NCBI GenBank assembly: GCA_965649825.1
Contig: OZ287704.1
Coordinates: 914,301 to 978,300, forward strand
From: Penicillus capitatus
Lineage: Eukaryota > Plantae > Chlorophyta
Reading direction: 5' to 3'
Length of the DNA: 64,000 nucleotides
The notes beneath the pieces are model-generated. The model was given only the letters and a program-made list of their open reading frames with translations. It did not search any database and was not told where the DNA came from. Below, in pieces: positions 958-39,250 of the stretch. The position numbers and the translations under genes are program-made. The stretch's first letter is position 1; every line of letters begins with the position of its first letter.

Positions 958-1309
958 AGGTCGTTCTCATGTCTTCCTCGTTCTTTACTATCTTCGAAAG
1001 CGACTTGTCCCTTTCTCTGACCGGAGTCCAGAAAAACTTACGAACATCCTGGAAGCCAGAAGCGCAGCAGAGTGCTTTGGCGGCATCCACACAACAGCCG
1101 TCATCGAACAGCGGCAACAAATCGCAAATGTACGAACGCGATTCGATGATGGAGACTCAATATGAAAGAAGGTGTGTTTCTAGCTCCGGTCAGTTGCAAC
1201 AGATTGAGGATGTTGATTGGAAAAGCGGGACGTCTTTACATGATGTGCCACGAACAACGAAAAGAGGACGCGTCGCTGTAGGGTTTCTTTCTCCAGGCAT
1301 CTTTGTTGA

Positions 1310-4300
1310 ATGAGGGTTTCATTAGTGGCTGTTGTTTTTTATACTTCTGCTTTCTAGTGCGTCGCTTGGGCGGGCGCAGCGTGAGAAGTCAAAACGCAAA
1401 ACCCTACAGACGGATATCGACGCACTCCTGGCGCTTAAAGATGCCCTACAGCTGCAAGAGGTATTGCTGGAATGGAATGATACCTCAGATCCATGCGATG
1501 ATGGATGGAAATATGTCATATGCGATTGCGATGGGTTTCCGGACGGCCTTCAAAATGAGCGATCGCATTGCGAGAACTATACGGCAACCGATCAGGATAG
1601 AATTGTATATTTGGAACTCAGAGAAGGCAGTGCACGAGAGAATTATACAAGCTTGCCTGACGCCCTTGGAAATCTCACAGAACTCAGATGGCTTGCCATA
1701 GACTCATTCCTGCTCAATGGTAGCCTTCCGGAAACCTTTGCAAATTTGACGCAGCTGAGATACCTATCGCTGGCTGAGAACACACTAACAGGTGAACTTC
1801 CGGACTTCCTTGCAGACCTGGAATACCTCAAGACACTGAAGCTCCATGCCAACAACTTCACCGGCGAAATACCTAAACGCTGGTGCAAGACAGACTGGGG
1901 ACTCTTCAATCCAGATACCAATGAGACCACCTTTACGATTCACGAAAACCCATTTCTATGTGGTAAACGACCAATGCCATTCTCGTCGTTGCACACACCA
2001 TCTCACACTTTTTTTGTAGGAAAGATTCCCAAGTGTGCTGCCAAGCAGTTGACGAGCATTGTTAACACCTGGCTTTATAATGACGATTTCGAAGCGCTGA
2101 AGAATGAAGGACACAGAGGGGACTGCGATTCAGAAGAACCTGTCTGCAATTCGGACATGGATGGATGCAGGATCCGCACTCCAGAATATTGGACGAATCC
2201 GGAGAACATTAACTTCAATTTTATAAAATTCGAAGATCCAGAAAGTGGCATCGATCATTATGAGTTTAGCATCGGCAGGAATGCAACAACGACTAATGAT
2301 ACTTATGATCTGTCCGATATATTGCCCATGCCAGAAGAAAGCACAGACTCATCCAATCCGTCGGTAGACAAACGCATGCATTCTTTATGGACAGTCGATT
2401 TTGATGTTTTTTTTTGTAATGGACAGAGGAACGAGATCGGTGAGGATTCCGTGATTAAAGTTCAGTTCAACTCGACCGAGTGGGACAAAGGATTTGTTGA
2501 GGGGCAAACATACATCGTTATCCTCAGGGCCTTCAATGGAGCAGGGCCTCCGCTCAATGCGACGATAAACAGCACACAAGTGATCGTGGATTTCTCGCCC
2601 CCAGTGTTCGAAAAAGTCTTCAACACGTACGTATGTCTATCACGTGATATGTGTCCAAGACTGGAGGATTGACGATTTGCAAATGCATCTGTAGACTTGA
2701 AGGGAGGACGGTACCCAATATGGAGTATGGATCGCCAATTGGAGCATCCTGGGACGTTGTCATTGACCCGCATACTAATGTCTGTAGACATACTTGACAA
2801 GCCTCGCATGCATTTGTGCGATTTTTAGGTGACCCATCTTTCTATTGCACTCGAGAGACGAGCGGCTCAAGAAGCGAATGGCACAGTGGAACACTTTGAA
2901 TTTGTCGAAAAACGTGACATCTCAGCAAACGCGACCAACGCGACGTTTGAAAAGACGGATGTGCGAGTACGGTGCGGATGTCGAAGATCTGCGGGGACGA
3001 CTGTGTGTTGGCAGGAAGGGGGTATATACCGTTTCAATCTGACAGCAACCAATGAAGCAGGACTCGTTGCATACCGAGTTTCATCCGCATTTCTTGTCAA
3101 CAAGTCAAAAGGGTGGTGCGTCCTTTCTCCAGCCCATGCATGCAACGTTGATAACAGATGCCGTTTTCTGCAGGACTCTCATCGGTATACACCCGGGCTT
3201 GTTTCTGGGGATCATTCTTCCGGTTATTGTGACAGTGATTGCCGTTATCTGCTACATTGCCATTCGCCGATTTTTCAGTTCTAACACTCTCGACCTTCAT
3301 CTGTACATGAAGGAATACGTCCATGAGCTCATGGGGATGACAGATGACGAGTTGTATGCAGCTCCGACTTCACAAGAAAACGACGAAAATCTTGCCCTTG
3401 TTGTGACAGGCACCCCGATTCCTTTCTTACAAACCATTATGCACAATGACTCTTTTTCAGATATCGAAGACTCTACAGCTCAGTCTGAGCGAAGCGATCA
3501 GTTGTTCAAGGAACTGATAAGCACGCACAATCAAGTACTGTCTTCCTTGCTATCAGCACGCGCTGGGATGATGCATTAGATTGTCGACGATCTGTCACGC
3601 AAGTTTGGAGGGTGTGAAGTTTGCCAGGAAGGAGATTCATTCACCATTGCTTTCCCTTCCATTACCAAAGCTGTCAATTTTGCATTGACTGCACAAGAAG
3701 AGTAAGATCCCTCCCTCTGAGTCAAACGCTGTTTGCATTGAGTGCACAGACTCTTGCGTCATCCCTGGAGGAAAGAGATACTTCGCTTGCCTGGCTGCCA
3801 TCCTGTGAAAACCGCCAATGGAACTGTCACTCTGTCAGGCGTACGCGTCAGAATGGGAATCCATTGGGCATCGATTCATGGCGTTTGCATGAAAAATCAC
3901 AGACTCTTTGACGCGAATTTGATCAAAGGTCCCGTCGTGGACCTCACAAAAGCAATTGCCGATGCAGGTTTGTTGCTCGCTTGAGAAGAGAACACACGGT
4001 AGGGAACATGCTGTCGATGAAGGTCATGGAGGTCAGGTTTTGTTAACACAGGCTGCTTGGATGCAGCTGTATCCGGTCATCTGTCTTTGTAAGTTTCCGA
4101 CGGTTTATCATCTGGGGTTGTACAGAAAAACTGGGAGCGAACACACATCTGAACTGCATCTCATTTATTCCATTACAGAATGGTTGGGAACAGGCATCGT
4201 GCGGAATCCTGTAAATTTGCGAAAATTTGAGCAGGTCATCATTCTTTCTCGTCATGCTTTGTCACTTTTTTTGTCTCATTCTTTTGCTTGATAGGTGATT

Positions 4301-6308
4301 AAGGGTTCGGGTTTCAACAGTATCCCTTGTCCAATAGGAGATTCCGACGCCACCTTGGCATTTGTTGCTACTCGATTGGTCACTGCTGGGGACAATCGTC
4401 TTCCTGTGGAGTTGGCAGAGAATCTGTACAGTATCATCGCATCGCAAGCACAATTGTTCCAGGGCTATGTCGTTTCGATTGATAAAAGAAGGGTACCATC
4501 CTCTCTGCGAGCCACGCAGACATTAAGTCCAGAGTGGCATTTTTGCAGGCGCGCTTTTTGGTTGTGTTTACCAAGTCCATTGATGCTGTTCGTTTCACAC
4601 AAGTGTGTCAGCTGAAGCTCGTTTTATGCAAATGGCCAGCTGAAACATCAAAGTTTTTTGGGGAAGAAGTTTTCACGCATTCTCGTCCGCCGATTCCACT
4701 CTTCAACGGCCCTCGAATAGCGATGGCGATACATACCACTGATGCCTTTATGCTGAACGGATTCAGTGGGAATCTGTCCAATGGAAATGCCTCCGGACAG
4801 ATTACGGGTGCCGGTATCACACTTGTCTGCGATCTCGTAGAATTCTGTGATGGTGGACAAGTGGTTCTAACCGAGAAAACATGGCAGAGAACACAACACA
4901 GTCTTCCGGGCCGTCGTAAGATCATCAATCTTGGAAGGCATATTGTCAGCACAAGCAATGCTTCATCAATGCTGTTGATTGAAATGACACCCTATATGCT
5001 GTCCGCTAGACAGTTTAAGCCGTTTGATGCTCTCGAGCAGACGGAAATGGGGTATCACAATGCACCGCCGATCAATCGACCGTTTACTGCTGCTTTTGTC
5101 GCTGTTAATAAGCCACGACAAGTTGTTATGGCCGAAAGAGAATGTGGATCTGATCAAAGTCAGGCTGCTCTGGATGCGAAGCCCGAAGCATTGATTGTCT
5201 ACGAACAGGCACTGGAACTTTATGCTGATCTCCTTCGACGGAGTTTGAAAATGTTCGAGGGATACGAGAGCAAGCAATTGAGCCCGGGAAGATTCTTTAT
5301 CGTCTTCTCGGGATTCAAGGATGCCATTCTATGGGCCTGTTATTTTCAATCAGAAATGCTCGAGCTTCCATGGCCAGAGAAACTGCTGGATATGGACGAA
5401 TGCAGTACACAGCACTGTCCCTTCACACATCGAGTGCTGCGAAGAGGATTGGGGCTGAGAGTTGGAATGGCCAATGGCCGTGCAGCATTCAAGGCTCCAA
5501 CCAAAACAGGCCAAGCTGATTACTACGGCGTCGTCACAAACTTAGCATCTCGTGTATTGTACATTGCCGCTCCAGGTCAAATCCTCATTCAACCAGGAGA
5601 TGGATTCTCGGATCTCCCGGTACGATGGATCAAACTGGATAAATTCTCTGGAGAGGAAGTAGGCATCCTCTCTTTCCCAGATAGCAAGGATGGCGTATCC
5701 ATGCAAGAACTGGCAGTCGAAATCGTACACGTCGGAAGCTTCTTGGCAAAAGGCATTACAGAACTGACAACAGTGTATCAGGTGGTGGGACGTTTCTTCA
5801 TTGAGAGGCGGATGTAGGATCACATTCTCATTGTTCTCTTTAGGCACAAGTATCATCTCTAGCTGTCCGCCAAATGTCAAAGATTAATGATAGCTTAACA
5901 GACGGCTCCACTCTGAGTCACAGACCTATTCGAAACCCATTCCTCTCGTCCAGGCTGTTTGGATGGGTCAAAGATGTCATGTGGCAGCTGCAGTATTCCC
6001 TCTCTGATTGGTCCATCAGAAAAAATCGCCACCACATGTCTCCTTCCTTTTCAGCGATCGCCTCATTCATGACTCGAGAGTTGTGTGTGTCTGTTAGGTT
6101 TTCTCCCTCATATCTGCATTCGATGAGTGACCAAAATGGATTGATGAGTCGAATGTCTGGTTGCGCTGCTCTGGAATTTGGCGCATCTTCTCGACAGAAC
6201 AAAGATCTCTCCAGTCAGACATACGAAATGTCTCACTTGCGCCGCGGTATCTACGCACCTTCAGGTTCAGGACTGGGGGGCTTGACTCCGGCAGATGATC
6301 AAGTGTAA
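1310..6308 (+). CDS. Receptor-like LRR / Fn3-like / TM / triple class III nucleotidyl cyclase protein, paralog 1 (multi-exon)
   Basis: Hydrophobic leader, LRR N-cap (DPCDDGWKYVIC), LRRs (LGNLTELRWLAIDSFLLNGSLP), DPESGI and NGAG Fn3-like motifs, TM (LFLGIILPVIVTVIAVICYIAI, about 3200-3265), then three cyclase-like units (VVT|DIEDST, EGDSFTIAF, VRVRMGIH, GGQVLL; GPRIAMAIH; ADYYGVVTNLASRV). ATG at 1310 is out of frame by one T in the T6 run at 1335-1340. Confidence 0.85.
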
Positions 6309-6573: not shown

Positions 6574-9500
6574 ATGCCTGACCTAAACAGGCAGCTTCTT
6601 GCGTCACTTCAGCGACGCCGACGTTACAGACGACACCACTTTCCGGTAATTCCCTCCCCTTTCCATTCATTCCCTGCGTCATACCCAGCACTACTCATCT
6701 TATTGTTTTTCGGGACAGGTGTTCGAGTTTCCTTGCATTCTTTTGTTGTTTCTTGGTATTTCCAGCGTTATGTCTCAATCTGAACTTAGTGGGGAGGACG
6801 AGCCCGTGCCCACTTACCAAAAAGACAAGACAGCACTGTTGAACATCAAAGCGGCGTTGCAGGAGAGTCTCGTAGGCAATCGATCGATCCTCGAGAATTG
6901 GACAGAAGATTCGGACCCATGCATAAACGGCTGGAGTCTTGTTTTCTGCGATTGCCTGACAGCGCGTCCTGTTCTCCCTGCCATCACCAACAACTCAGAC
7001 AGCACGTTCTGTACGAATTATACAGAACCAGACGGCACACGGCGTGTTGTTGCCCTATATTTCAGAGGAGGGACGGTAACGGAGGAAAAGTATTCGGGAA
7101 ATCTCACCAGTGTCATTGGAGATCTTGACCGTCTGAGTTACCTTGATCTAAGACAGAATGCATTTGTGGGAGACATTCCAGATTCCTTCTCAAGTCTCGT
7201 CCACCTGAAGTTCCTCTCTATGGCGGAAAATCAACTGACCGGAACGATTCCAGCATACTTCAAAAGATTTAGGCAGCTTGTGCGGCTGGAACTCAATGAC
7301 AATGATTTTAGTGGACCCCTTCCTGAGATTGCATGTGGAAGAGGACATCGTGGAGATGAAGATCCTCAGCTGTATAGAATCGTGGTCTCTGGAAACGCTG
7401 GACTCTGTGGCGATGTGCCAAGCTGTATGCAAAGAAAAGTCGTTAATGTGAATGGCACGGCGCTTAAGCATCCCGAATACGATTTCAATCAGGCGACCAG
7501 CGGAGTCTGTGATGTGACACCACCTGTTTGCGAGAGACACGAAGGATGTCAAGTCTCGATACCCGAATACTGGACGAATCCAAACAATATCAGTTTTACG
7601 TTCACGCCCTTCACCGATCCAGAGTCTGATATTAAAGGATATGATTTTCAGCTGAGGCAAGTGGCTGGTGTAAACGTAGAACCCTTCAATCTCTCCACTG
7701 CCGTTGTTATCAATATTTCAGACAGCCAACTCGACATCAAAAACACGACGGAGGAGAGGAAAGTGGGAGGGCAGACGATGAATCTTGTGGTCTACCTTGT
7801 GTCGATCAATGAGGCCAACATCACTGGGAGTCTGCAAGCCGGTGTGGAGTACAGTGTGAGTGTCATAGCCACCAACAACGCTGGACCTCCTCTCCAATAC
7901 AACATCACCAAGGAGCGTGTGAAATATGACCCTACAGAACCGGAGAAGACTGATTTTTTCAACACGTTGGCTGGTCCCTCTCTGCTCGACCATTGAATTT
8001 CGCGCCTTCTAGGCCCAATAAGACGAATAGTGACAAACAAGACGATAATGGATTGCTTGGGGTGTCGTGGAACGAAACCTTAAGGGATGTAGAGTCGGGT
8101 ATCAAGAGCATTCGATTGGCCGTATGCACACACACGCTACCAGAAGAAGACTGCGATGGTGTCTACACCGTGAATGTGACGATACTGGGAGAAGGGGAGA
8201 ACACCACCACTGTTGAAAAGATACGTCAGGAAAACGCCATTGCAGAGGAGACTGAAGGGGGGAATATTACTGTGGAGGACACAAGAACTCACTGGATTAT
8301 TAAGAAAGAAGATGCAAAACTTACGGTGTTTTTGACCTCATCACCACGCGTGCAGCATTTTGTTTGACAGGTGGGTCGAAGCTATAGGTATAAACTGGAG
8401 GTCACAAATGGAGCTGGTCTGCAGAGAGTACTCGAATCGACGGAGTTCGAATTGACTCATCGTGGTTCCAAGTTGTCTTTCTTTTGGCATCTCTGTGCTG
8501 ATGTAACACCTCTCTCTGTCTGCAGCTTTGTGGAGAAACTCCGCTACGTTGTCATCGCTGCTGCTGTATTTGTCTTCGGCGCAATCACTACAGCTGCACT
8601 TGTCTATTTCACATCCAAGATCCGAAAGAGAACGCAATTTAATGCAGATGAACATCTCAAGGCTTTTATGTACCATGTCATGGATTCCTCGGAGGAAGAT
8701 GTCAGCACCTCTTCAGTGCCTATCAATGATCAACAGGAGTTGGCATTCGTCATTACAGGTTACTTCTGAGCATATCATGTGGGTATCTGATAAACCTTTA
8801 TGCTTTGGTAGATGAGGAAGCATCCACCGAACAATCGCGAGTGAACGAATCGGCGTTCAAAGAGTTGAGGGACATTCACGACATGGTCGGTGTCCCATTG
8901 GCCAAACCATCTGCTGGAGAATGCGTTTGCTATGGTGTTTAGATTATTCGTGATACGTATGAAGAGTATCTCGGCTATGAGATTATCACAGAAGGCGATT
9001 CTTTTCAGCTGGCATTCAGCACTGTCTCTAATGCCATCCGCTTCTGTGTTGAAGTGCAGCACAAGTTTCTGGAGTTTCGATGGAGTCCAGATATCCTCCG
9101 TCTGCCCAGCTGCAATGTCGTGAAGGATGACCGCGGAAAAGACATCATTTTCCGAGGTCCTCGTGTACGCATGGCTGTGCATTGGGCCAAAAAGGAGCTG
9201 GTGACCAACCGAGTGCATTCCTTCACCAAGCATCGAATATTCGAGGGGCCAGCTTTTGAGACGGCCAAGGAATTGTGCGATGCAGCATTCGGTGGACAAA
9301 TTTTGATGAGCCATGAAGCATGGGTGCATTTCGGAAACGATTTTTCCACAGCCGGCTTTCCAACGATCGAACTCCTGGGATCCTATCAAATGCTTAGATG
9401 GCCAGAAGCAATGTTCATCTACAACATAACACAACGTGTGGGCAAGAAACTGAACCGATCCTTTCCTTACCTGCGAGACTTGCAATGCGTCGTAAGCTCC

Positions 9501-12059
9501 ATCCATCTGCACGAGAGGACATCGCGGGACAGCACTGAGAGATCTCGTATGGCAGGTTTCAAGAGAGAAGAGCGTGAACATTATTGCCCCACCAAAACCA
9601 GACAACAAAGGCGCATTGACATTCGCAGCACTGAAACTGCAAACCATGACAGATGACCCTGAAAGCCCAGTGATTGAAATAACATTCGATATCATTGCCT
9701 GTCATGCGCAGCATTTTCTGGGACATATCTTCCGAATAGATCGAAACGAAGTAGGATCCGTTCTGTATACACAAAGAAGGCTGAATCGAATGATTGGTGA
9801 TCGTGGTGATGCAGAAAGAGGTCCTTGTCTCATTTGGCGCTACTATTGATGCCGTGCGTTTTGCCTACGTCATTCAGATGGCATTGGTCTTACATTCATG
9901 GCCTGTCGAAGTGACGGCCGTGTGTGGCCCCACAATCCCTGGTCCAGAGCAGATCCCTCTTTTCCACGGACCACGTGTTTCTATCGGAATTCATCAGACT
10001 CAGAGCTTCGGAATCAGTCTCAGTTCCAGCAAAACAGATCCAGGTAGCCAAGTAACAGACTATGCAGGCCACGGTATTTCATTTGCTCGCCGATTGGCTG
10101 CCGTGGCACATGGTGGGCAGATCATCTTGTCAGGTCGTACGTGGACAACAGTACAGAATTCACTTTCCTATCGTTCACAGGTCTTCTCCTTTTTCTCCTA
10201 TCAAACGACAGCGATGATGTGCTGAGACATGTGTGTGTGTTCTGTCTGTCTAGACATTGAATCTCGGCAAACATATACTGGATGATGAGTATAACCATCC
10301 CGTTTGGTTGTTCGAGCTGTTGCCGGTAGATCTGAAAGACCGGAATTTTCCGATTGTCAAGACCAAGGATCAAATTGAATCGGGGTACAGAGATTCCCCA
10401 TCCATTGACGATAACATTGCCATCGTCTTTGCAAAAGTGGATAAGCCACGGGTAAGATACAGGCACGATGGATGATCTCTCGGATCCATCTCTGTGTGGC
10501 ATTGGCAGCTCATTCGGCGCTTCGAAGAGCGAAAAGATGTTGCAGATGTGTCTGAACAGGAGATGCACGATGCGCTGTCGGTGTATTATCAGTCTGTTAG
10601 TATTTTCTCGACAATTGTGCGCAAGCGGTTGAAGAGCTACAACGGTTATGAGTGCAAAGAACCAGAAATGGGAAAATTCACGCTTGCATTTGCTGAGCTG
10701 AAGAACGCCATTCTGTGGGCATGTCATGTACATTCAGAAATGCTGGCACTGGATTGGCCGATGAAGCTGTTGACATTGGAAGAATGCCAAGCCGTCCTGC
10801 GTCTTGGCAGAGTGGTTCATAGAGGATTGAGGGTCAAGATTGGCATGGCCTATGGTAAAGTCTTCGATAAACGTCCCATCAACACAGGACGCGCCGATTA
10901 CTTTGGAGCCATACCGAATCTGGCAGCTCGGGTTTCATCTCTGGCACGACCGGGGCAAGTTCTCATCCATTCCAGCACAAACTTCGACAAGAGAGATATT
11001 GTGTGGATGAGCAACGATGCAGGACTTATGCTCTATGATGAACCATTGGAACCAGCAATCGATGGAGCGTCCGAAGTAGCTGTGGAAATATCCAAGTTGG
11101 GAATGTTCCTGCTTCGGAGCTTCAACGAACTCAAAATGCTTTATCAAGTATCACGACGCACCACCCATTCTTCCCTTCTGCCATGTCTGATGGCGCCATC
11201 TGTGTGGGATTTTAGGCACAGCCTGCGTCTGTAGCCACACCAGAACGCTTCGGCAGTACAGATGTGGCAAGTATGTACAGTACAGATACGCATCATCGTG
11301 TACCGAATACCATGTCAAGATTCTTCAATCACTTGCGATTCAAGAACATCTTGACAAGACATATTCCGGAACCATCCTCTTTTCTAAGCATCACCAGTTA
11401 CCCACATGGTTTTGGTGGAACCGCCTCTCATTCGCAACCTGGAGTGTTTCGTCCTGTGAGCCCACCTCTCTTTCCGTCTGGTCTTCCACCTGGAGAGATG
11501 GCTGCAATGGGAAGTGGCAAGAACGGAGAAACCATACATCTGGAAACGATACGTTCACAACAGACGGATGGCCATGGAGATAATCAATCAGGCAGTGACC
11601 TGGAGAATCTCATCAAACTCTCTCCTCGTTCGCCCATTAACCTCAACGGTTCCCATAACGCCGCATCATCAACGCACAGTACCCATGGATCCAGTTCGTA
11701 TGTTACACAACCATTGCTCCCTGCCGGAGAAAGACAGTCTGAGATCTCACCACAGATAACGAAAATGGATTCCTTGAATTCAGATGACTGCATCGTGTCC
11801 TTTGGAACAAACGAATCTGCTTACAAAGTCATTCCCCCTGCTCAATCACTAGGAACAAGCGACGATGACACAACACCAGCTGATTATGGAAATCGACTGG
11901 CAACACTGTACTCAAATGTTACAGGTAAGGACATACATCTTTTGTTGTCATCACACATGTATTCTCTGTCTGATGTTGGGTCGTGTAGGAGCAAACAGCA
12001 CTGCACAGGAATTCTCGTTTGTTAAAAATCAGAAACCCGACGCATCGGATGCAAATTGA
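6574..12059 (+). CDS. Receptor-like LRR / Fn3-like / TM / triple class III nucleotidyl cyclase protein, paralog 2 (multi-exon)
   Basis: Same architecture as paralog 1: DPCINGWSLVFC, LRRs, DPESDI and DVESGI motifs, TM (YVVIAAAVFVFGAITTAALVYF), cyclase units (VIT|DEEAST, EGDSFQLAF, GPRVRMAVH; GPRVSIGIH; ADYFGAIPNLAARV), Ser-rich tail. ATG 6574 joins 6719 through a phase-0 intron; stop 12057-12059 follows the intron starting gtaagg at about 11926. Confidence 0.85.
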
Positions 12060-17945: not shown

Positions 17946-19394
17946 TCATTGCGTTTGTTCTGCTTCGTTGATTTCGTGGCAGATTTCTTCCAATCTGGAC
18001 ACGATGTACGAGAAATCTGGGCGAGTCTCTGGAGCTCTCTGGAGACATTCGTGCATCACTTCAGCCCACACATCATGACAGCCATGTGGTCGATCCAGTC
18101 GCAGGCTTCCTTGCATAATGCCTTCCAGCAGATCTCTTGGAGAGAGCTCTCGATAGGGCATTTCGCCCATCTCCCAGATTTCCCACAGCACCACGCCAAA
18201 AGAATAGACATCCACCTTCTCATTCACGAGGTCTGTGATGTTGCCCTGGCTTCCCACGCGTTCAATACTCGGAAAGAGCTCGGGTGCCATCCATGGAAGT
18301 GTGCCTCGCATATTACCACTGACAAACGTCTTAATCTTTGCCTTTGATAATCCCACATCTCCAATCTTCACGATAGGGTTGTCCAGGTCACGCAAGTCAC
18401 ACAACAAGTTCTCACACTTCAAATCGAAATGAATCACGTTTCGATTGTGCAGAAACTCCATTCCTCGCGCAGCACGTAAAGCCACAGCGACTCTGAGCTT
18501 CTGTGTGTCCGATGGACCTCCTTTCAGCTGCATCAGCTTGTTCTTCAGGGATAAATGCGGCAGATATTCAACAACAAGACCTGGACTAGGGCCATTGTTC
18601 AGCATCCCATAGAAGGATACGACACAGGGATGGCGAAGACAGGCCAACGTACTGGCCTCTTGACATGCCATATCCATGCTTTCTCTGTCAGTTAATGTAT
18701 GCCATTCCTTAACTGCCACTTCGACGCCTCTCCAAAGCGACAGCTTAACAGAAGCAAACTGACCGCGACCAAGTTCATATTTCATGGAAAGTTCATCGTA
18801 GAAAATAAACGGCGTCGAAGGCAAGGAATACGTCATCACCGGTGATGGAGTGGAACTCTCAGTCATCGGAGACTCCATCAACGAAGACATACCCATAGAT
18901 CCCATCTGTAACTGCAATGCCGGACGCGGAGGCATAGCCGTTACTGGCGGTAAATGCTCATTCGTTTCCGATTCCACTTTTCTCGCATGAGGTCTCGTGG
19001 TGCTCCTCACCGAGCCAATTGAACGATTGACAATGGTGGCCGGTCTAGTGAATTCTGGCAGCAGAGCAGCCCTCTCCATCATGGAGCTATCCATTCTATC
19101 AAGCGTCCTCTGATCTGTACTTGTACTCATGTTGTCTCCAGATGAGGCTGTACTAGCAGATTGAATTCTACTTCCAATCTCTGGAAAGGATGTTGTAGAC
19201 TGGTCTTCGGTTTTACGTAGTGTTGGGAAGCGTATCTGGGACATTTCGCTAATCATGGAACCCAGATTTTTGGCTTTCTCGTCGAGTAGGAAGCCCAACA
19301 CCTTCCCGAAGTGAACGCGGACGTTCTGTACTTCTTCCTCCTCACTCGTGTCTTCCTCGCGGGCAGAAACGCCCGCATGACACCCACCGCCCAT
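17946..19394 (-). CDS. Raf-like (TKL/MAP3K) protein kinase, intronless
   Basis: Complete kinase motifs GRGQFASV, VAVK, HFDLKCEN, DVG, MRGTLPWMAPE, DVYSFGVVLWE; likely start MGGGCHAG at 19394. Confidence 0.9.
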   Translation of the reverse strand: MGGGCHAGVSAREEDTSEEEEVQNVRVHFGKVLGFLLDEKAKNLGSMISEMSQIRFPTLRKTEDQSTTSFPEIGSRIQSASTASSGDNMSTSTDQRTLDRMDSSMMERAALLPEFTRPATIVNRSIGSVRSTTRPHARKVESETNEHLPPVTAMPPRPALQLQMGSMGMSSLMESPMTESSTPSPVMTYSLPSTPFIFYDELSMKYELGRGQFASVKLSLWRGVEVAVKEWHTLTDRESMDMACQEASTLACLRHPCVVSFYGMLNNGPSPGLVVEYLPHLSLKNKLMQLKGGPSDTQKLRVAVALRAARGMEFLHNRNVIHFDLKCENLLCDLRDLDNPIVKIGDVGLSKAKIKTFVSGNMRGTLPWMAPELFPSIERVGSQGNITDLVNEKVDVYSFGVVLWEIWEMGEMPYRELSPRDLLEGIMQGSLRLDRPHGCHDVWAEVMHECLQRAPETRPDFSYIVSRLEEICHEINEAEQTQ

Positions 19395-19584
19395 TACCCT
19401 TAAAAAAAAGCTAAGCGTCGGACGCGGCCATCTCTTATGCTTTTTTGAATCAACCGACCGTTCACTCGCGCGACAGTCGCTCTTGTGTCGACCCATTTGC
19501 AACACAGCACGCTTGATGCCACACAATTCTGAAGGTAAATGCAAAATCGAATCGCACGTCTATCATCCATCCGTTCCTCTAACG

Positions 19585-33294: not shown

Positions 33295-36085
33295 TTAGGT
33301 GGCACAAGCTTCCTTTTCTGCCCGTTCAGCCACAGGCGGAACCGTCTCAACCACCTCCTCTTGCACAACCACTGCGTCTCGCTTCAGGGAAAGCATAGAT
33401 GGGTGCTTTTGTGCGAAGACTTCATAGACGTCGGCCTTCACCGCTGGTTTCTTCAATGGCTTGGCTGGGTATTGCAGGACGATCTTCTCAAGCTCTTTGC
33501 CTGACAGTTCTTTCTTCTCTAAGAGCATCTTGGATCCTGCCTCCAGTGCATTGGAATAGCTGGTGATGATGTCTAGGCTTTGTTGGTAGGTTTCCCACAG
33601 GATTGCGTAACACTCTGTCAATATCCTGCGCAACATCGTCGTGCGTTGAAGAGGAAGAAGAAGGATCAGACTTGTGCATCGTGGAATCGCAACATTGAAA
33701 CATGCCGCCTTGCAGTCCTTTGCCGAACACGTTCTCGTCAATGTTGTCCACCGTCACCTCAAAGTGGCGCTGAGTGCTTCCTGTGCCGGGTGTGATGGGT
33801 GCGTAGGAGGTGAGACCCAATTCTGATAGACCATAATTTGTGACGATCTTCTCTGCCAAACGAAAAGCGCGACCCAGATCTTTGGCGCCGTAGGATGAGG
33901 GTTCGCCATAGAAATGCTCTTCTGCTGCTCTGCCGGCCAAGATCACACATATGCGTTCCAACATCCGTGCTCGTGTCGTCATGGTGTAGTCTTCATCCGG
34001 GCCACGGAAGAAGACCGTTCGGGTGAACTCATGCCCACGAGCGATGATTGACAGCTTCTCAACAGCTTCCAAGCGCCCAGTGCGATCACGCAGGACCATC
34101 GCGACAATGCCTCGACCCATTTCGTGTACAGCAAAGCGTCGACCCGCTTTCAACGCTGCAGGCTGTACAGGAAGAAGGATACCATGAAGCACTCTGTCCA
34201 CGGCATTGTACACATCTTCTGACGTGATTTCATGTCCATCACGTCGAAGAGTTACCAGAGCAGACTCATTCAACACATTCTCCAGTTCAGCCCCTGCCAA
34301 TCCAGGCAGATCTCTCGCCAGCTGTAGCAAATCCACATCATTGGCAAGTTTATACTTCTTTGCATGAAGCTCCAGGATTTCGTGCCGGCTGTTTGTGTCC
34401 GGCAGGACGACCTGTATCTTTCTATCAAATCTGCCAGGTCTTTGGAGTGCAGGATCAAGAAGATCAGCTCGGTTTGTTGCGCCGATGAAGACAACGCCCG
34501 ATTCGGAAGAGAAGCCGTCCATCTCTGTCAGCAATTGATTCAGTGTCTGCTCCCGCTCTTCATTGGTCATGACACCAGCGTCAGCTCTTTTGATTCCAAC
34601 AGCATCGATTTCGTCGACGAAGATGATACAGGCCTGTTCTTGAGAACGAGCTCTCTTGAAAAGATCGCGCACTCGGGCAGCACCGACGCCGACAATAGCT
34701 TCGACAAATTCACTCCCACTCATTTGATAGAACGGCACGCCTGCCTCTCCAGCAATGGCCTTCGCAATCAGCGTCTTTCCCGTTCCTGGAGGACCTTCGA
34801 GTAAAACTCCCTTGGGTGGCTTTGCACGAACAGCTTGATACTTGTTAGGCTCTTTGAGAAACTGCAGCAAAGCATAAAATGTGCAAAACGGGAGATGACG
34901 ATTACCTCGACAAGTTGCTTAAGATCTTCGAGAATGCTATCCAGTCCTGCGATATCTTCAAAGAAGACGCCCGTTCGGCCATCTTTCCGTGCTCGTCCCT
35001 TTGACTGTGCAAACTCCATGGCCTGGACTTGGTCTGCAGGCATCTGCTTTCTCGGCTTGAAGACACCGACCATCAGACAGATGGCCAAGAACGTTAAAGC
35101 AAATATAATCATTGCCACTCTTGGAGCTATATGCCAGAAACCGTGTAAACTGGGCTCCTTCCGCGTCATTTGGAAAGAGATATCAATGAGCCCAGTAGCA
35201 GGCGACGTCAATCTCGAAGCTTCACTCTTTTTCAGGTAACCTCGATCCGCATACACCTCCTCCAGCTCCGTATCAGGCATCTTTCTCTGAAACGCTAACC
35301 CTAATCGCTCAAAGAGCTACATTCATGACCTCTGCTCTCTCTTCGGCGACAGCGATGGATGGGACCATACCTGCAGGTAGCCATAATTGTATGGACGCCC
35401 AATGTTCGATGCTCGATAGATCTGCGGAATGTCCACCAGGTCATGACGCGGAAACACATAATCTTCTTCGTAGGTATCTTCTCCAGGATTATTCAGTTCG
35501 CACCAAACAGGTTCTTTGCCTTTCTCCTGGACCACTGCTCTATAGCCAGAGAAACTTGGCCGGAACAGACGGCCGCGATCTTCAAAGAACAAGATCTTCC
35601 ATTCCGTTGAGTTTGGATTGAAGAGTGGCGATCTCCAGTTTCGCTCCTCTACTCCTTTGTACAGTTGCATAAACGGTATTTGCTTCATTTTACGCCAACA
35701 CGGCTCCTTCGCCTCCATTCCTTCACCCAAACTCTCCAGACGTGCAAAGGCAATTTTCTCACGCGTCGTGCGACCCACTGCTTCTTTCTTGACGGCGACA
35801 TGATACTGTTTCAGATCTTCGAACGAGGGACCTCTTGTGCAGATGCGCTGAACGTCGTTCGCTGAGAATTTAGGGTTTGGCCGAACAGTTTCCGTTTTCT
35901 TTTGTGCCTCCTGTTGCGTCACATCGTCAGTCATGTGCACGCGTCAAGAGCTATCATCGTCACGCACCGCATTGACTGAAATGAGGCGTCGCCTCGGCTT
36001 CCTTCCCCGTCCGAAGGCCACCGTCTTCCATGGAAATGCACTGAGAGAGGTCGAAGTACCCATTACCTGTCGAGTGAGAGACGAC
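33295..36085 (-). CDS. Plastid FtsH-like AAA+ ATPase lacking the HExxH protease motif (FtsHi type)
   Basis: Transit-like N-terminus, TM segment, Walker A GPPGTGKT, Walker B FVDEID, SRH ATNRADLLDPALQRPGRFDR; the M41 region has HEMGR (34112-34126) instead of HExxH. Confidence 0.9.
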
Positions 36086-36296: not shown

Positions 36297-39250
36297 ATGT
36301 CAGTCCCTCGCGCAGCCAGTGCAGTGAGCGACGTTGCTATTCAGTACGCCAAGAATTTGAGCTGTTGGTTTCGTGACTATATCACGGCGATTAAACATGG
36401 ACGTCTACATCCCTTTACACCGCTGGAACGCAAAACACGCGAAGCGACACGCAATGAGCCTTGGTATTTGAGCCGCTTCTCGTCAGCTCGTATTGAAGAA
36501 GTGTGGCGAAGGGGACCAACGGGTTGTCAGCTCAACGAGCTCACGGAAGCTTCTCTAGAAGCGAATAACTGCTCCGTCATTTATGTCTCACCTCTCGCAT
36601 CTCTGTCTGTGCTGCATATTGGTGATTCTATCTAGGCTGTCTTGGTATTTCGTTTGCACTACCCGTCAGAAAAGTGGAGAAATGTGTACAAGGTTAGTGA
36701 GCCACTGTTGTGACCTAGGATGCCGCTCATACTGGATATTTATCCATCTGTAGGCGTTACAGGTTTTGGAATTTATTTTAAGACGAGGAGGAGAAGAAGG
36801 TGTGAGACAAGCAAAGGAAGAGTTCCCTGACCTGCTGAAGGAACTGGAGTCATTCTCGTACATTGGAACGGACGGTCGCGATTACGGAGTCAATGTACGT
36901 GTAAGGCAAGCTTATGTTCAGAGAATCTTCTCATTCATGTATGATGGATGCCGTATTCTAGAGCGGCAGCTGTGGCGAAGCTGTTGGACGACGATGGAGC
37001 ACTCCAAGAAGAACGGCAGAAGCATCAGAGAACGAGTCGTAAACTCAAAGGCTATACACGTGCAGAGATGCAGGAAGCATCGACTGTGGACGATGTGGCT
37101 CGATCTAATAGTTGGGTGTGGTTCTCACACATTTCTCCTCCTTGCATCCTTCATGGCTGACCAGGGCGGACGAGAGCTTGTCAGAAGCGATCCGAGCGAT
37201 AACGGACGGCCGTCTCCCAATGGAGTGCTCAATCGGGGTGCTGGTGAAATGAAAGGCGTCTCTCTGGAAGACAATAAAAAATTCTTAGCAGAGTTGAAAA
37301 GCATTCTTTCACGGCCGGAAAATAAAATCTGTGCGGATTGCAAAGAGCAGATGCCGACATGGGCAAGTATCAACTGTGGAGTATTCATCTGTCTAAAGTG
37401 TTCCGGCATTCATCGAGGCCTCGGCGTGCACGTCTCCAAAGTCTGCTTGGCCAGAGCATAATAACAGATCTGACTGATGCTCTTTCTGTGCACCTGCAGG
37501 TGCGGTCTTGCACGCTCGATACATGGCTGCCAGAACAAGTTCAGTTTCTCTCAATGACAGGCAACGCTGTTGCCAATACCTACTGGGAGGTGAGGACTCT
37601 ATACAAGCAGACAATGATGATAAAATGTCCCTCTCTGATTCCTTGCGATGACAATGCCATGCTAATCTGAGCCTTGTCTGATGAAAGAAGCCTCTACATT
37701 TTTGTGTCTTGTTCTAGGCACAGCTGCGGCCACATCAGCGACCGACATCGGACGCAGGCCTTGCTGGGTTCATTCGCGAAAAGTATGCAGATCGACGTTT
37801 TGCATCTGGAACCTGGCCACCCAATGTCGACAAGCCAACGTCTGAAGCGCATGCGCCTGTTGCGGAGGAAGAGAATCGACTGCCGAGCGCACCGTCAGGT
37901 TCTGTTCTTCAGATAGGTCCACCGAAAGCAGCAGAAAATTCCCGACCACCAAACGATCTCCTTAGATTCGAGGATGAGGCATTTGCCTTTAAGGTACCCC
38001 CAGTCGATGCTTGTCTCGATGTCTTTACCGCTATATCGATGCACAGAACGAGGCGGGTCCGGAAATAGATCAAGGCGGTATGGGATCATCTGAAATGGCA
38101 TTAGTGGCAGAAGAGGCAGCGCAGGATCCGGCACGAGAGAGGACACTTGGCTTTGAAAACAGCGCTCTGTTTGAGCAGCGATCGACTTTTCTTCGTATGC
38201 AGTCTCGGTTGAATTCAATGAAGAGTGAGCAGACACCTCCACCTGCAGTACAACACCCTCCTGAAAGCTCTTCTCCCTCTCACCATGTCCGGGCGCCCAG
38301 GTATTGCCTCTCTTCCATACAAGCGAGAACATTTCGTGTCCCTACAGGAGTGAGCGAAATGGTTCAGAAGACGTCATTCAAACAACCCTTTTGGATTTTG
38401 ATGATCTGGAGAGTCTCTCCGAAACGATGTCGATGGCAAGTGCCAGACTCGTATTTCCTGGATTCCTACCCAAGCAACCATCTGCCAGTAGTAGCAAACC
38501 ACCACCTGGAAAACCGACGACACCAGAGAGAATGCGATCGGCGATGGCATCGAAGGAAATCCATTCGACCGTCTCGACGGCCACACCAAGGCCACAGCAA
38601 TCCGGAAGACCAGAACGCTCACCAGTAGTGGATCTACTAGATGCTCCTTTGACTCTTTCGCCGCCGATTGGCATCGAGGCAATGAATCAACAGGATGATC
38701 CCTTTAGCTTTATGTCGTCCGTGGAGCCTCTTCTCGTTCAGCAGAACACAGAGAGAGAACGCATGAGGTCGACTCAAGTACAAAACCAAGCACTTGGACC
38801 ATGGACACAGTCCGAAGCATTCCCCGCAGCCGTACCTGTACATCAGCCGCATGCATCCCTTTCGTCCCCACCCCAGTCACAGACCCAGTTGCATGCAGCG
38901 TCGCAGTCTTCTGTTTTCTTTCGACCGCCAACGGCACAAGTGTCGCATGCACATGCTCGATCAGAAGGAACCGCATCTCATCCAGTGACCGATGGCTTCA
39001 CCATCACACCTGTACGGTCTAAACAGTCCTTCTCGTCACGATCAAAGGATCGAGGTGGTCTTCCAATGAATCAGCAGACAGTGTCGACACCGAAGCCCTC
39101 TGTCTTGAGTGATTCAGAACTGACGAGCATTCATGAATTATCGCGGCTGGATCAACTCTTTGTTCAGCAGATCGAGGACTTTCTGCATTTCGGTTACCGG
39201 TCTGTTTCGCATCAAAATCCTCCATGTCTGTGACTAGCATCGAAAAATAA
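36297..39250 (+). CDS. ENTH (epsin-like) domain fused to an ArfGAP domain, with a Pro/Ser/Gln-rich tail
   Basis: ENTH: KTREATRNEPW|G, KWRNVYK|ALQVLEFIL, FSYIGTDGRDYGVNVR. ArfGAP: NKICADC...WASINCGVFICLKCSGIHRGLGVHVSK|VRSCTLD. 3' end approximate (39233-39250). Confidence 0.85.

What the first reader, a model, noticed from the sequence alone, without database searches (positions are those of the whole stretch)
3391..5790. Catalytic residues split between cyclase domains 1 and 3, with a dead middle domain, conserved in both paralogs
Seen: domain 1 keeps both metal-binding Asp (T-DIEDST and EGDSF; paralog 2 T-DEEAST and EGDSF) but lacks the Asn/Arg pair (VDLTKAI; FETAKEL). Domain 3 lacks both Asp but keeps the Lys (GYESKQ; GYECKE), the Asp of ADY(Y/F)G and NxxxR (NLASR; NLAAR). 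Domain 2 has none. Known: this complementarity is how mammalian C1/C2 pseudo-heterodimeric adenylyl cyclases form one active site, and Lys/Asp specify ATP. Inference: an intramolecular D1-D3 adenylyl cyclase, with D2 as a spacer or allosteric pseudo-domain. The identical pattern in two diverged paralogs argues for selection.
Basis: partly seen in the sequence, partly recalled or inferred. Interest (0 to 1): 0.85.

Follow-up and report, generated by a model that had tools for sequence, protein, structure and literature searches.

The report
Three-domain receptor adenylyl cyclase gene pair
Two neighbouring green-alga genes encode cell-surface receptor proteins with three cyclase domains in a row, where the first and third each hold one half of a cAMP-making site and the middle one is catalytically dead but conserved; this layout is common in green algae and no paper I could find describes it.

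Summary
After removing short introns (45-73 nt), both paralogs encode a leucine-rich-repeat (LRR) ectodomain, one membrane helix, three class III cyclase homology domains (CHDs: D1, D2, D3) and a tail. D1 keeps both metal-binding Asp and none of the other catalytic residues. D3 lacks both Asp but keeps Lys and Asp (adenine), Asn and Arg, and a gamma-phosphate Lys/Arg. D2 lacks both metal Asp, the Lys and the Asn.

The pattern holds across 35-36 three-CHD proteins: D1 Asp2 35/35, D3 Arg 33/34, D2 Asp2 1/36. The window is from a chlorophyte. Named relatives include 'Adenylate cyclase [Tetrabaena socialis]'.

Two-CHD relatives (Tetraselmis, Mesostigma) have only a D1-type and a D3-type domain. 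D2 is a D1-derived extra copy under purifying selection (dN/dS 0.10-0.19), so it is not a mere spacer.

A composite D1/D3 site making cAMP is well supported. The claim that the pairing is intramolecular is not. AlphaFold2 models did not place adjacent domains, or D1 and D3 in a D2-deleted construct, in the canonical C1:C2 pose. Pairing within one chain or between chains stays open.

Verdict: a new variant of the known pseudo-heterodimer principle, moderately interesting.

The parts
1326..3183 (+). Paralog 1 (P1) ectodomain. Hydrophobic signal-like segment from 1326, LRRNT_2 at about 1407-1526, LRRs at about 1608-1892, then Cys-rich and FN3-like modules. The internal intron model is not resolved. 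A possible 5' exon has an ATG at 1128-1149 and ends at 1276, followed by an intron at 1277-1325.
   Evidence: Pfam LRRNT_2 E=3.9e-9, LRR_8 and LRR_1. The 5' exon is inferred by reading the sequence. My spliced aligner over-splices in this region.
3196..3264 (+). P1 transmembrane helix (GLFLGIILPVIVTVIAVICYIAI), followed by RRFF and a juxtamembrane segment of about 40 aa.
   Evidence: Read directly from the translation.
3391..4177 (+). P1 D1, a C1-like CHD. Exons 3184-3409, 3461-3534, 3580-3701, 3750-3967 and 4023-4234. Metal Asp1 at 3409+3461-3462 and Asp2 at 3634-3636. No Lys, purine Asp, Asn or Arg.
   Evidence: splice model; Pfam; Ma1120 1.2e-10, GRESAG4.1 1e-9.
3410..3460 (+). First cytoplasmic intron of P1. 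It has a GC-AG boundary, is 51 nt long, is in frame and has no stop codon. If retained it would insert 17 aa directly before metal Asp1.
   Evidence: The GC donor and the length are conserved in ortholog L001. The homologous intron is GT-AG in P2, L002 and L003.
4352..4989 (+). P1 D2, a catalytically dead CHD derived from D1. Exons 4295-4492 and 4549 onward. The Asp1 position is A (4367-4369), the Asp2 position is A (4549-4551), the Asn position is T and the Arg position is D.
   Evidence: hhalign D2 against D1 99.6%, E=1e-24. D2 profile against 1fx2 E=9.9e-7. AF2 fold. dN/dS 0.19..
5083..5781 (+). P1 D3, a C2-like CHD within exon 4549-5781. Lys 5272-5274, purine Asp 5518-5520, Asn 5539-5541, Arg 5551-5553, gamma-phosphate Lys 5749-5751. 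The metal positions are A (5101-5103) and G (5287-5289).
5844..6308 (+). P1 C-terminal tail exon after intron 5782-5843 (CAG|GTGGTG … TTTAG|GCA). The earlier apparent stop at 5815-5817 lies inside this intron.
   Evidence: The homologous junction in P2 is confirmed by the collinear alignment to P0246.
6574..8514 (+). Paralog 2 (P2) 5' exon (ATG at 6574, ending 6645, MPDLNRQLLASLQRRRRYRRHHFP), intron 6646-6718, then the ectodomain with LRRNT_2, LRRs and a weak fn3 match.
   Evidence: LRR_1 6.3e-9, LRRNT_2 5e-8, fn3 0.0088.
8545..8610 (+). P2 transmembrane helix (YVVIAAAVFVFGAITTAALVYF).
   Evidence: Translation. It aligns to the TM of P0246.
8740..9431 (+). P2 D1. Asp1 at 8758+8812-8813 and Asp2 at 8997-8999. 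The Asn position is E (9258-9260) and the Arg position is E (9270-9272). Introns at 8759-8811 and 8886-8942.
9613..10322 (+). P2 D2, dead. It lacks both metal Asp, the Lys and the Asn, but keeps a purine-position Asp and an Arg. Introns at 9492-9555, 9751-9814 and 10181-10253.
   Evidence: (dN/dS 0.095).
10416..11147 (+). P2 D3. Lys 10656-10658, Asp 10896-10898, Asn 10917-10919, Arg 10929-10931, gamma-phosphate Arg 11115-11117. The metal positions are K (10434-10436) and G (10671-10673). Intron at 10452-10508.
11216..12025 (+). P2 C-terminal Ser/Pro-rich tail exon after intron 11148-11215.
   Evidence: It aligns to the P0246 tail as far as '…LASLYSN'.

Best explanation
P1 and P2 are tandem paralogs in a chlorophyte green alga. 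Each encodes a single-pass, LRR-ectodomain receptor-type class III adenylyl cyclase with three cyclase homology domains (CHDs) of the trypanosome-GRESAG4-like subtype.

No single domain can catalyse the reaction alone. D1 supplies the two Mg/Mn-binding Asp and the phosphate-binding loop, which is the role of mammalian C1. D3 supplies the adenine-selecting Lys and Asp, the ribose and transition-state Asn and Arg, and the gamma-phosphate Lys/Arg, which is the role of mammalian C2.

One competent ATP-to-cAMP site therefore forms only where a D1 meets a D3 head to tail. The pseudo-symmetric second pocket of that pair is degenerate.

D2 is an extra, D1-derived CHD that has lost the catalytic residues but is kept by selection as a folded domain. 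It most probably has a structural or regulatory role, such as dimerisation or an alternative partner.

Shown: the gene structure, the domain identities, the residue placements, family-wide conservation, the ancestry of D2 and purifying selection. Inferred: catalysis, the product, the D1/D3 interface and control by the ectodomain. Unresolved: whether D1 and D3 of the same chain pair (cis) or those of two chains in a receptor dimer pair (trans).
For: - Gene model: short GT-AG introns give one open frame in both paralogs. An independent spliced alignment reproduces them. P2 aligns collinearly with the 1549-aa protein P0246 with no gaps at any exon junction.
- CHD identity: Pfam PF00211 scores above its cut-off. 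D1 hits Ma1120 and GRESAG4. The D3 profile hits 1fx2 at 1.4e-19 and the D2 profile at 9.9e-7.
- Fold: the AF2 model shows three CHD folds (pLDDT 81.6). Foldseek top hits are 1fx2/1fx4 and Ma1120, with target-normalised TM 0.69-0.86.
- Complementarity: see the residue table and the census of 35-36 three-CHD proteins.
  - D1: Asp1 31/32, Asp2 35/35, Asn 2/35, Arg 1/35.
  - D3: Asp1 0/34, Asp2 0/36, Lys 30/36, Asp 33/35, Asn 31/34, Arg 33/34, Lys/Arg 25/30.
  - D2: Asp1 1/30, Asp2 1/36, Asn 1/36.
- Ancestry: two-CHD relatives have a first CHD that best matches D1 and a second that best matches D3 (for example P0019: 122.8 bits against D3, 74.6 against D1 and 59.9 against D2). D2 is closest to D1 (hhalign 1e-24 against 2e-11 for D3).
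- Selection: dN/dS between the window and ortholog L001 is D1 0.10/0.044, D2 0.19/0.095 and D3 0.10/0.075 at dS 0.25-0.46.
- The C1 and C2 division of labour is established knowledge and is summarised in PMC6027212.
Against: - There is no biochemical evidence.
- AF2 did not produce a canonical C1:C2-like pose. This holds for the adjacent pair aligned to sAC/AC9 in the full model (target TM 0.29, rmsd about 22 A) and for D1-D3 in the D2-deleted construct (TM 0.26-0.31, pTM 0.55).
- Those models rest on shallow alignments of 12-19 sequences. My deletion left only a short linker, which may itself prevent cis pairing.
- Conservation in D3 is not perfect among close relatives. L002a has Asn to Ser, L005a has Lys to Ser, and L003a has lost Lys, Asp, Asn and Arg while keeping the D1 Asp pair.
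- P1's first intron has a GC donor and could be retained in frame. That would displace strand beta-1 from Asp1.
Confidence: 0.7

Rival explanations
1. One reading: D1 and D3 of the same chain fold back onto each other as an intramolecular pseudo-heterodimer, with D2 looped out. This is a sub-case of the best explanation.
For: All well-studied proteins that carry complementary CHDs in one chain pair them in cis (mammalian membrane cyclases and soluble AC; established knowledge, PMC6027212). D2, at about 230 aa, would give ample length for D1 and D3 to meet. The full-length AF2 model has pTM 0.63, which suggests some confident inter-domain packing.
Against: The D2-deleted AF2 model did not put D1 and D3 in the C1:C2 pose. 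The tools do not expose model coordinates or inter-domain error estimates, so the full model could not be inspected. Two-CHD relatives join the D1-type and D3-type domains by only about 35 aa, much shorter than the roughly 68-aa linker of soluble AC (from memory). That may favour trans pairing.
Confidence: 0.35
2. Trans pairing. In a receptor dimer, D1 of one chain pairs with D3 of the other, giving two active sites per dimer, while D2 pairs with D2'. Ligand-driven dimerisation through the LRR ectodomain would switch the enzyme on, as proposed for receptor guanylyl cyclases and trypanosomal cyclases.
For: The receptor-like topology with a single membrane helix. The short, partly structured inter-domain linkers. 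AF2's failure to pair D1 and D3 in cis. The dimerisation-based activation proposed for the closest solved relatives (PMC6027212). It also gives D2 an obvious partner, since lone CHDs normally dimerise.
Against: No direct evidence. No multimer prediction was possible with these tools.
Confidence: 0.3
3. A pseudo-enzyme. The three CHDs no longer make a cyclic nucleotide and act as a nucleotide-binding or scaffolding module downstream of the LRR receptor.
For: Some relatives have lost D3 residues (L003a fully, L002a and L005a in part). D2 shows that dead CHDs are maintained in this family. AF2 gave no canonical dimer.
Against: The full complementary set is kept almost invariantly over a deep family, for example D1 Asp2 35/35 and D3 Arg 33/34. 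It is also kept in both window paralogs, under strong purifying selection. Metal-ligand Asp pairs have no known reason to persist without catalysis.
Confidence: 0.1
4. Guanylyl or promiscuous cyclase. The composite site forms, but the product is cGMP or another cyclic nucleotide.
For: Two-CHD relatives carry Glu at the Lys position and Ala or Asp at the purine Asp position, so specificity has shifted within the wider family.
Against: P1 and P2 have the Lys/Asp pair typical of adenylyl cyclases, not the Glu/Cys-type pair of guanylyl cyclases.
Confidence: 0.05
5. Gene-model artefact. The three domains belong to separate genes, or the splice model is wrong.
For: No transcript data were available for the window. 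The prokaryote-style gene calls in the databases split the locus into fragments.
Against: The splice sites are consistent and the intron positions are conserved across four species. Annotated and representative proteins of 900-1650 aa carry D1-D2-D3 in one chain. P0246 is collinear across every junction.
Confidence: 0.02

Closest known systems
Mammalian membrane adenylyl cyclases (C1/C2 pseudo-heterodimer)
   Same: The catalytic residues are divided between two homologous CHDs in one chain. The metal Asp pair sits on one (C1 = D1). Lys/Asp, Asn/Arg and the gamma-phosphate Lys sit on the other (C2 = D3). This gives one active pocket and one degenerate pocket.
   Different: The mammalian enzymes have two six-helix membrane bundles and G-protein control. 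Here there is one membrane helix, an LRR ectodomain and a third, dead CHD between the two halves. The CHD subtype also differs, being trypanosome-like with an alpha3-beta4 insertion. The canonical pose was not reproduced by AF2 here.
Soluble adenylyl cyclase ADCY10 (tandem C1-C2 in one soluble chain)
   Same: Tandem complementary CHDs without an intervening membrane domain.
   Different: It has only two CHDs and a longer linker, and it belongs to a different CHD subclass (purine-position Thr, bicarbonate site; from memory). Foldseek aligns both of its domains to the models, but they do not superpose as a rigid pair (TM about 0.26-0.30).
Trypanosoma brucei receptor-type adenylyl cyclases (GRESAG4.1/4.3, PDB 1fx2/1fx4)
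   Same: The best Foldseek match by E-value for the models, and the best sequence match for the D2 and D3 profiles. The overall design is shared: a large ectodomain, one membrane helix and a cytoplasmic CHD. The insertion in the alpha3-beta4 loop, the site of the trypanosomal delta-subdomain (PMC6027212), is also shared.
   Different: Trypanosomal enzymes have one CHD carrying all catalytic residues and act as homodimers. Their ectodomain is of the periplasmic-binding-protein type, not LRR.
Two-CHD green-lineage relatives (Tetraselmis P0019/P0021, Mesostigma P0022-P0024, Tetradesmus P0031)
   Same: The same family. The first CHD is of D1 type with the Asp pair. The second is of D3 type with Asn, Arg and the gamma-phosphate Lys.
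   Different: They have no D2. The Lys position is Glu. The ectodomains differ.
'Adenylate cyclase [Tetrabaena socialis]' (P0007) and unnamed full-length representatives (P0246, P0248, P0250-P0253 and others)
   Same: True family members, with D1-D2-D3 in the same order and the same residue pattern.
   Different: They are 30-45% identical to the window proteins. They carry only an automatic name. No paper describing the three-domain layout was found.

Membership tests
Class III nucleotidyl cyclase (cyclase homology domain, PF00211) | Sequence match to the family profile above the curated cut-off | tested here: met
   Spliced P1 scores 39.6 bits and P2 35.9 bits against the cut-off of 21.9. D2 is detected only by profile methods: 1fx2 E=9.9e-7 and hhalign to D1 E=1e-24.
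Class III nucleotidyl cyclase (cyclase homology domain, PF00211) | The beta-alpha-beta-beta-alpha-beta CHD fold | tested here: met
   The AF2 model shows three such units. Foldseek to 1fx2/1fx4 and Ma1120 gives probability 1.00 and target-normalised TM 0.69-0.86.
Class III nucleotidyl cyclase (cyclase homology domain, PF00211) | A complete catalytic set across a dimer: two metal Asp, substrate-selecting Lys/Asp, Asn/Arg | tested here: met
   The set is complete only for D1 and D3 taken together. No single domain has it.
Class III nucleotidyl cyclase (cyclase homology domain, PF00211) | Cyclic nucleotide synthesis | not testable with these tools
   This needs an enzyme assay.
Pseudo-heterodimeric (C1/C2-type) cyclases | Complementary loss of catalytic residues in two CHDs of one chain | tested here: met
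   Residue table and census.
Pseudo-heterodimeric (C1/C2-type) cyclases | Head-to-tail pairing of the two complementary CHDs within one chain | tested here: inconclusive
   The AF2 full model and the D2-deleted model do not superpose on sAC or AC9 two-domain chains (TM 0.26-0.31, rmsd about 22 A). The alignments were shallow, and no coordinates or multimer run were available.
Trypanosomatid-type receptor adenylyl cyclase CHD | An insertion in the alpha3-beta4 loop, and closest similarity to GRESAG4 | tested here: met
   The D2 and D3 profiles align through the '…DW…' insertion of 1fx2. 1fx2 and 1fx4 are the top Foldseek hits by E-value. The location of the delta-subdomain is taken from PMC6027212.
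Trypanosomatid-type receptor adenylyl cyclase CHD | A single CHD carrying all catalytic residues and acting as a homodimer | tested here: not met
   There are three CHDs, and none is self-sufficient.
Plant/algal LRR receptor-like ectodomain | An LRRNT_2 cap followed by LRRs, outside a single membrane helix | tested here: met
   LRRNT_2 3.9e-9 and 5e-8, plus LRR_8 and LRR_1. The membrane helix is read from the translation.

The most novel reading that the evidence does not exclude
D2 is a built-in decoy partner. As a D1-derived CHD without metal ligands, it could occupy D3's dimer face (or D1's) in the resting receptor, forming a dead pseudo-dimer. Ligand binding to the LRR ectodomain would swap partners so that D1 meets D3. 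That would be a three-domain, partner-exchange switch not known for any cyclase.

A second layer is possible in P1. The conserved in-frame GC-AG intron just before the first metal Asp could be retained, producing an inactive isoform.
Probability: 0.12. Interest if true: 0.8.

Novelty: new variant of a known kind. Interest (0 to 1): 0.55.

Why it matters
Class III cyclases are the main source of cAMP and cGMP in eukaryotes. The accepted picture has one CHD acting as a homodimer, or two CHDs acting as a pseudo-heterodimer. This family adds a stable third state: three CHDs with a conserved, selected, catalytically dead domain between the two working halves.

At least 22 representative proteins clustered at 50% identity show this layout, and the named relatives are green algae. 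That raises a concrete question about what a dead CHD is for, whether dimerisation, autoinhibition or allosteric ligand binding.

The family also gives green algae a set of surface-receptor adenylyl cyclases with plant-like LRR ectodomains. Algal cAMP signalling is well documented, for example in Chlamydomonas mating. Yet the cyclases responsible were still described as 'as yet unidentified' in 2021 (bioRxiv 10.1101/2021.09.03.458889). I did not test any link between this family and that process.

Tried and rejected
- Direct Pfam and PDB searches of unspliced ORF translations gave only a weak D3 hit. The locus had to be spliced first.
- An HSP-chaining splice finder failed on in-frame introns. 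I replaced it with a dynamic-programming spliced aligner.
- That aligner over-splices where similarity is low, so I give no exon model for the ectodomains.
- Rfam and tRNA scans of the window found nothing useful for identifying the organism.
- Taxon identification through a conserved FtsH-like ORF places the window among chlorophytes, with no named relative above about 64% identity. No species can be named.
- Foldseek cannot bridge D2, so the full-length model could not test D1:D3 contact. The D2-deleted construct was a workaround, and its negative result is ambiguous.
- Literature searches for three-CHD cyclases, green-algal LRR cyclases and Chlamydomonas cyclase architecture found no description of this layout. 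The library searched is incomplete.
- The alternative alignment that would put an Asn of P1 D1 ('FDANL') on the catalytic Asn (second weak segment) was rejected. It needs a 6-residue gap, and that Asn is not conserved in P2 or other members.

Full report
WHAT THE LOCUS IS

The window is eukaryotic. ORFs at the finding are broken across frames. They join into one frame through short introns of 45-73 nt with GT-AG boundaries, apart from one GC-AG. No tRNA or Rfam family is present.

There are two tandem genes on the + strand: P1 at about 1326-6308 and P2 at 6574-12025. Both have the same plan:
- a signal-like hydrophobic start;
- an LRRNT_2 cap plus LRRs (Pfam E 4e-9 to 5e-8);
- Cys-rich and FN3-like modules;
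- one transmembrane helix;
- three cyclase-like domains;
- a tail encoded by one more exon, after an intron that follows '…VYQ'.

I wrote a dynamic-programming spliced aligner. Using P2 as the query, it reproduced every hand-placed P1 intron.

The model has independent support. P0246, a 1549-aa protein from another organism found in the representative library, aligns collinearly with my P2 model. Identity is 45% over 1020 residues, including the tail, with no gap at any exon junction.

WHICH ORGANISM

Homologs of the cyclase region that carry names are green algae: Tetrabaena socialis, Astrephomene, Monoraphidium, Tetradesmus, Tetraselmis and Mesostigma.

A conserved FtsH-like ORF in the window (33488-34870, minus strand) has its best named matches in green algae at 55-64% identity, including Haematococcus, Chlorella ohadii and Pyramimonas.

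The window is therefore from a chlorophyte with no close named relative in these collections. A 92%-identical ortholog pair lies on a 600-kb ENA metagenome contig (L001). More distant copies lie on three other contigs (L002, L003/L004 and L005).

CHECKING THE OBSERVATION

The spliced proteins pass Pfam's Guanylate_cyc cut-off. The three domains were placed as follows:
- D1 alone hits Mycobacterium avium Ma1120 (1.2e-10) and T. brucei GRESAG4.1 (1e-9). 'TDIEDST' and 'EGDSF' align on 'TDIEEST' and 'QGDGF', the two metal-Asp motifs.
- A D3 profile hits GRESAG4.1 at 1.4e-19. Lys aligns on Lys. The Asp of VGDSF aligns on Gly. D, N and R of 'ADY.G..NLA.R' align on 'YDYYGRTPNMAAR'.
- A D2 profile hits the same structure at 9.9e-7. 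The Asn and Arg positions are replaced.

A joint alignment of all domains includes canonical single-CHD bacterial cyclases that carry all seven residues. It gives the following table:
- D1 has Asp1 and Asp2 only.
- D3 has Lys, purine Asp, Asn, Arg and the gamma-phosphate Lys/Arg only.
- D2 of P1 has none.
- D2 of P2 keeps a purine-position Asp and an Arg, but no metal Asp, Lys or Asn.

IS IT MORE THAN CHANCE

I spliced the same region out of L001, L002, L003 and L005 and aligned the results (A1). A profile search then found the wider family. An exhaustive HMM search of 1.84 billion representatives returned 1193 proteins at E ≤ 1e-30.

All 22 full-length representatives I examined have D1-D2-D3 in that order, often behind an ectodomain of about 500 aa.

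Census over 35-36 three-CHD proteins:
- D1: Asp1 31/32, Asp2 35/35, Asn 2/35, Arg 1/35.
- D3: Asp1 0/34, Asp2 0/36, Lys 30/36, purine Asp 33/35, Asn 31/34, Arg 33/34, Lys/Arg 25/30.
- D2: Asp1 1/30, Asp2 1/36, Asn 1/36.

The complementarity is a deep, conserved family feature and not a coincidence of two paralogs.

WHERE D2 CAME FROM AND WHETHER IT MATTERS

Profile-profile comparison gives these results:
- D2 against D1: 99.6% probability, E=1e-24, over 214 columns.
- D2 against D3: E=2e-11.
- D1 against D3: E=5.5e-19.

D2 is therefore a full CHD that is closest to D1.

Relatives with only two CHDs (Tetraselmis, Mesostigma, Tetradesmus) have a first domain that best matches the D1 model and a second that best matches the D3 model. 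The Asp pair sits on the first domain, and Asn, Arg and Lys sit on the second.

The simplest history is an ancestral D1+D3 tandem into which a D1 copy was inserted and then lost its catalytic residues.

D2 is not decaying. Between the window and L001, dN/dS is 0.19 (P1) and 0.095 (P2) at dS of about 0.25-0.3. This is close to the values for D1 (0.10, 0.044) and D3 (0.10, 0.075). AF2 gives D2 some of the highest confidence in the chain.

HOW IT MOST LIKELY WORKS

By the established mechanism of class III cyclases (summarised in PMC6027212), an active site needs the metal Asp pair from one CHD. It needs the purine, ribose and phosphate residues from the partner CHD of a head-to-tail dimer.

Here only a D1/D3 interface can supply both halves. 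Lys plus Asp predicts ATP.

The word 'intramolecular' is not supported. Two AF2 results bear on it:
- The model of the whole three-domain region (pLDDT 81.6, pTM 0.63) matches single CHDs well. Two-domain chains (soluble AC, AC9 soluble part) align over about 510 columns but superpose poorly (target TM 0.29, rmsd about 22 A). The adjacent pair that was aligned is therefore not in the canonical pose.
- Foldseek cannot skip D2, so I modelled a D2-deleted construct (pLDDT 76.5, pTM 0.55). Both of its domains align to AC9 and sAC but again do not superpose (TM 0.26-0.31, rmsd about 22 A).

This is a negative result with caveats. The alignments were shallow at 12-19 sequences. The linker in my construct was short. 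I had no access to coordinates or PAE, and no multimer run was possible.

It leaves two equally viable geometries. One is cis pairing with D2 looped out. The other is trans pairing in a receptor dimer (D1:D3', D3:D1', D2:D2'). The trans geometry would fit the dimerisation-based activation proposed for the closest solved relatives.

COUNTER-EVIDENCE TO KEEP IN VIEW

Among close relatives the D3 set is not inviolate. L002a has Asn to Ser. L005a has Lys to Ser. The single-copy L003a has lost all four residues while keeping D1's Asp pair. Some lineage-specific copies may be inactive.

In P1 the first cytoplasmic intron (3410-3460) has a GC donor, is 51 nt long, is in frame and has no stop codon. 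Its length and GC donor are conserved in L001. Five of its seven substitutions would be synonymous if it were read as codons.

The D1 model prefers the spliced form by 15.7 bits. The homologous intron is an ordinary GT-AG in P2, L002 and L003. I therefore treat it as an intron that may sometimes be retained. With only seven substitutions the signal is weak.

COMPARISON WITH WHAT IS KNOWN

The family works like mammalian C1/C2 cyclases and soluble AC in how the active site is divided. It resembles trypanosomal receptor cyclases in CHD subtype and receptor topology.

It is not a member of the trypanosomal type, which has one self-sufficient CHD. It is not a standard two-CHD enzyme either.

Proteins of this family are already in public databases under automatic names such as 'Adenylate cyclase [Tetrabaena socialis]'. 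Four literature searches found no description of a three-CHD cyclase or of this green-algal LRR-cyclase family. The library is incomplete, so this is absence of evidence only.

The representative search also turned up other, unrelated proteins with four to eight CHD-like stretches. Multi-CHD chains as such are therefore not unique.

VERDICT

- Observation: confirmed.
- Interpretation: partly supported. A composite D1/D3 adenylyl cyclase site is supported. Intramolecular pairing is unproven. D2 is more than a spacer.
- Novelty: a new variant of a known kind.
- Interest: 0.55.

Noticed in passing
window 3410-3460 (and L001 8936-8986): The first cytoplasmic intron of P1 is GC-AG, 51 nt, in frame and free of stop codons. 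Its GC donor and length are conserved in the 92%-identical ortholog. Five of its seven substitutions would be synonymous if it were translated. If retained it would insert 17 aa directly before metal Asp1. It may be an alternatively retained intron.
   Followed up: partly
L001, L002, L005 (pair); L003 8700-11210 (single copy): The P1-type/P2-type tandem gene pair is conserved in three other contigs, so the duplication is old. L003, from a JGI metagenome contig labelled BBAY70, has a single copy. Its D3 has lost Lys, Asp, Asn and Arg while its D1 keeps both Asp.
   Followed up: partly
window 54118-58521 (-): An uninterrupted 1467-aa gag-pol ORF of an LTR-retrotransposon type. It has gag, aspartyl protease, reverse transcriptase, RNase H and integrase domains, and looks intact. 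It sits in the most GC-rich part of the window (0.55-0.56).
   Followed up: partly
window 17946-19544 (-), 33488-34870 (-), 36766-37461 (+), 48360-49163 (+), 59758-62581 (-): The neighbouring genes look like ordinary eukaryotic housekeeping or signalling genes: a Ser/Thr-Tyr-type protein kinase, an FtsH-like AAA protease, an ArfGAP, a HAT-repeat splicing factor and a HECT ubiquitin ligase. The FtsH homolog of the L002 organism appears to lie on the same 127.9-kb contig as its cyclase pair (same longest-contig length), which hints at conserved synteny.
   Followed up: no
proteins P0256, P0260, P0262, P0266, P0272: The representative library holds other proteins with four to eight cyclase-like stretches in one chain. 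Some have several apparently complete CHDs in tandem. P0256 repeats a multi-helix membrane block plus a D1-like CHD four times. These are different families of unknown origin.
   Followed up: no
window 1128-1325 and 6574-6718: Neither paralog has an in-frame ATG directly before its signal-like hydrophobic segment. P2 has a clean 72-nt first exon (ATG at 6574) with an Arg-rich start and a 73-nt intron. For P1 the equivalent exon is uncertain; candidate ATGs are at 1128, 1146 and 1149, with a donor at 1277.
   Followed up: partly
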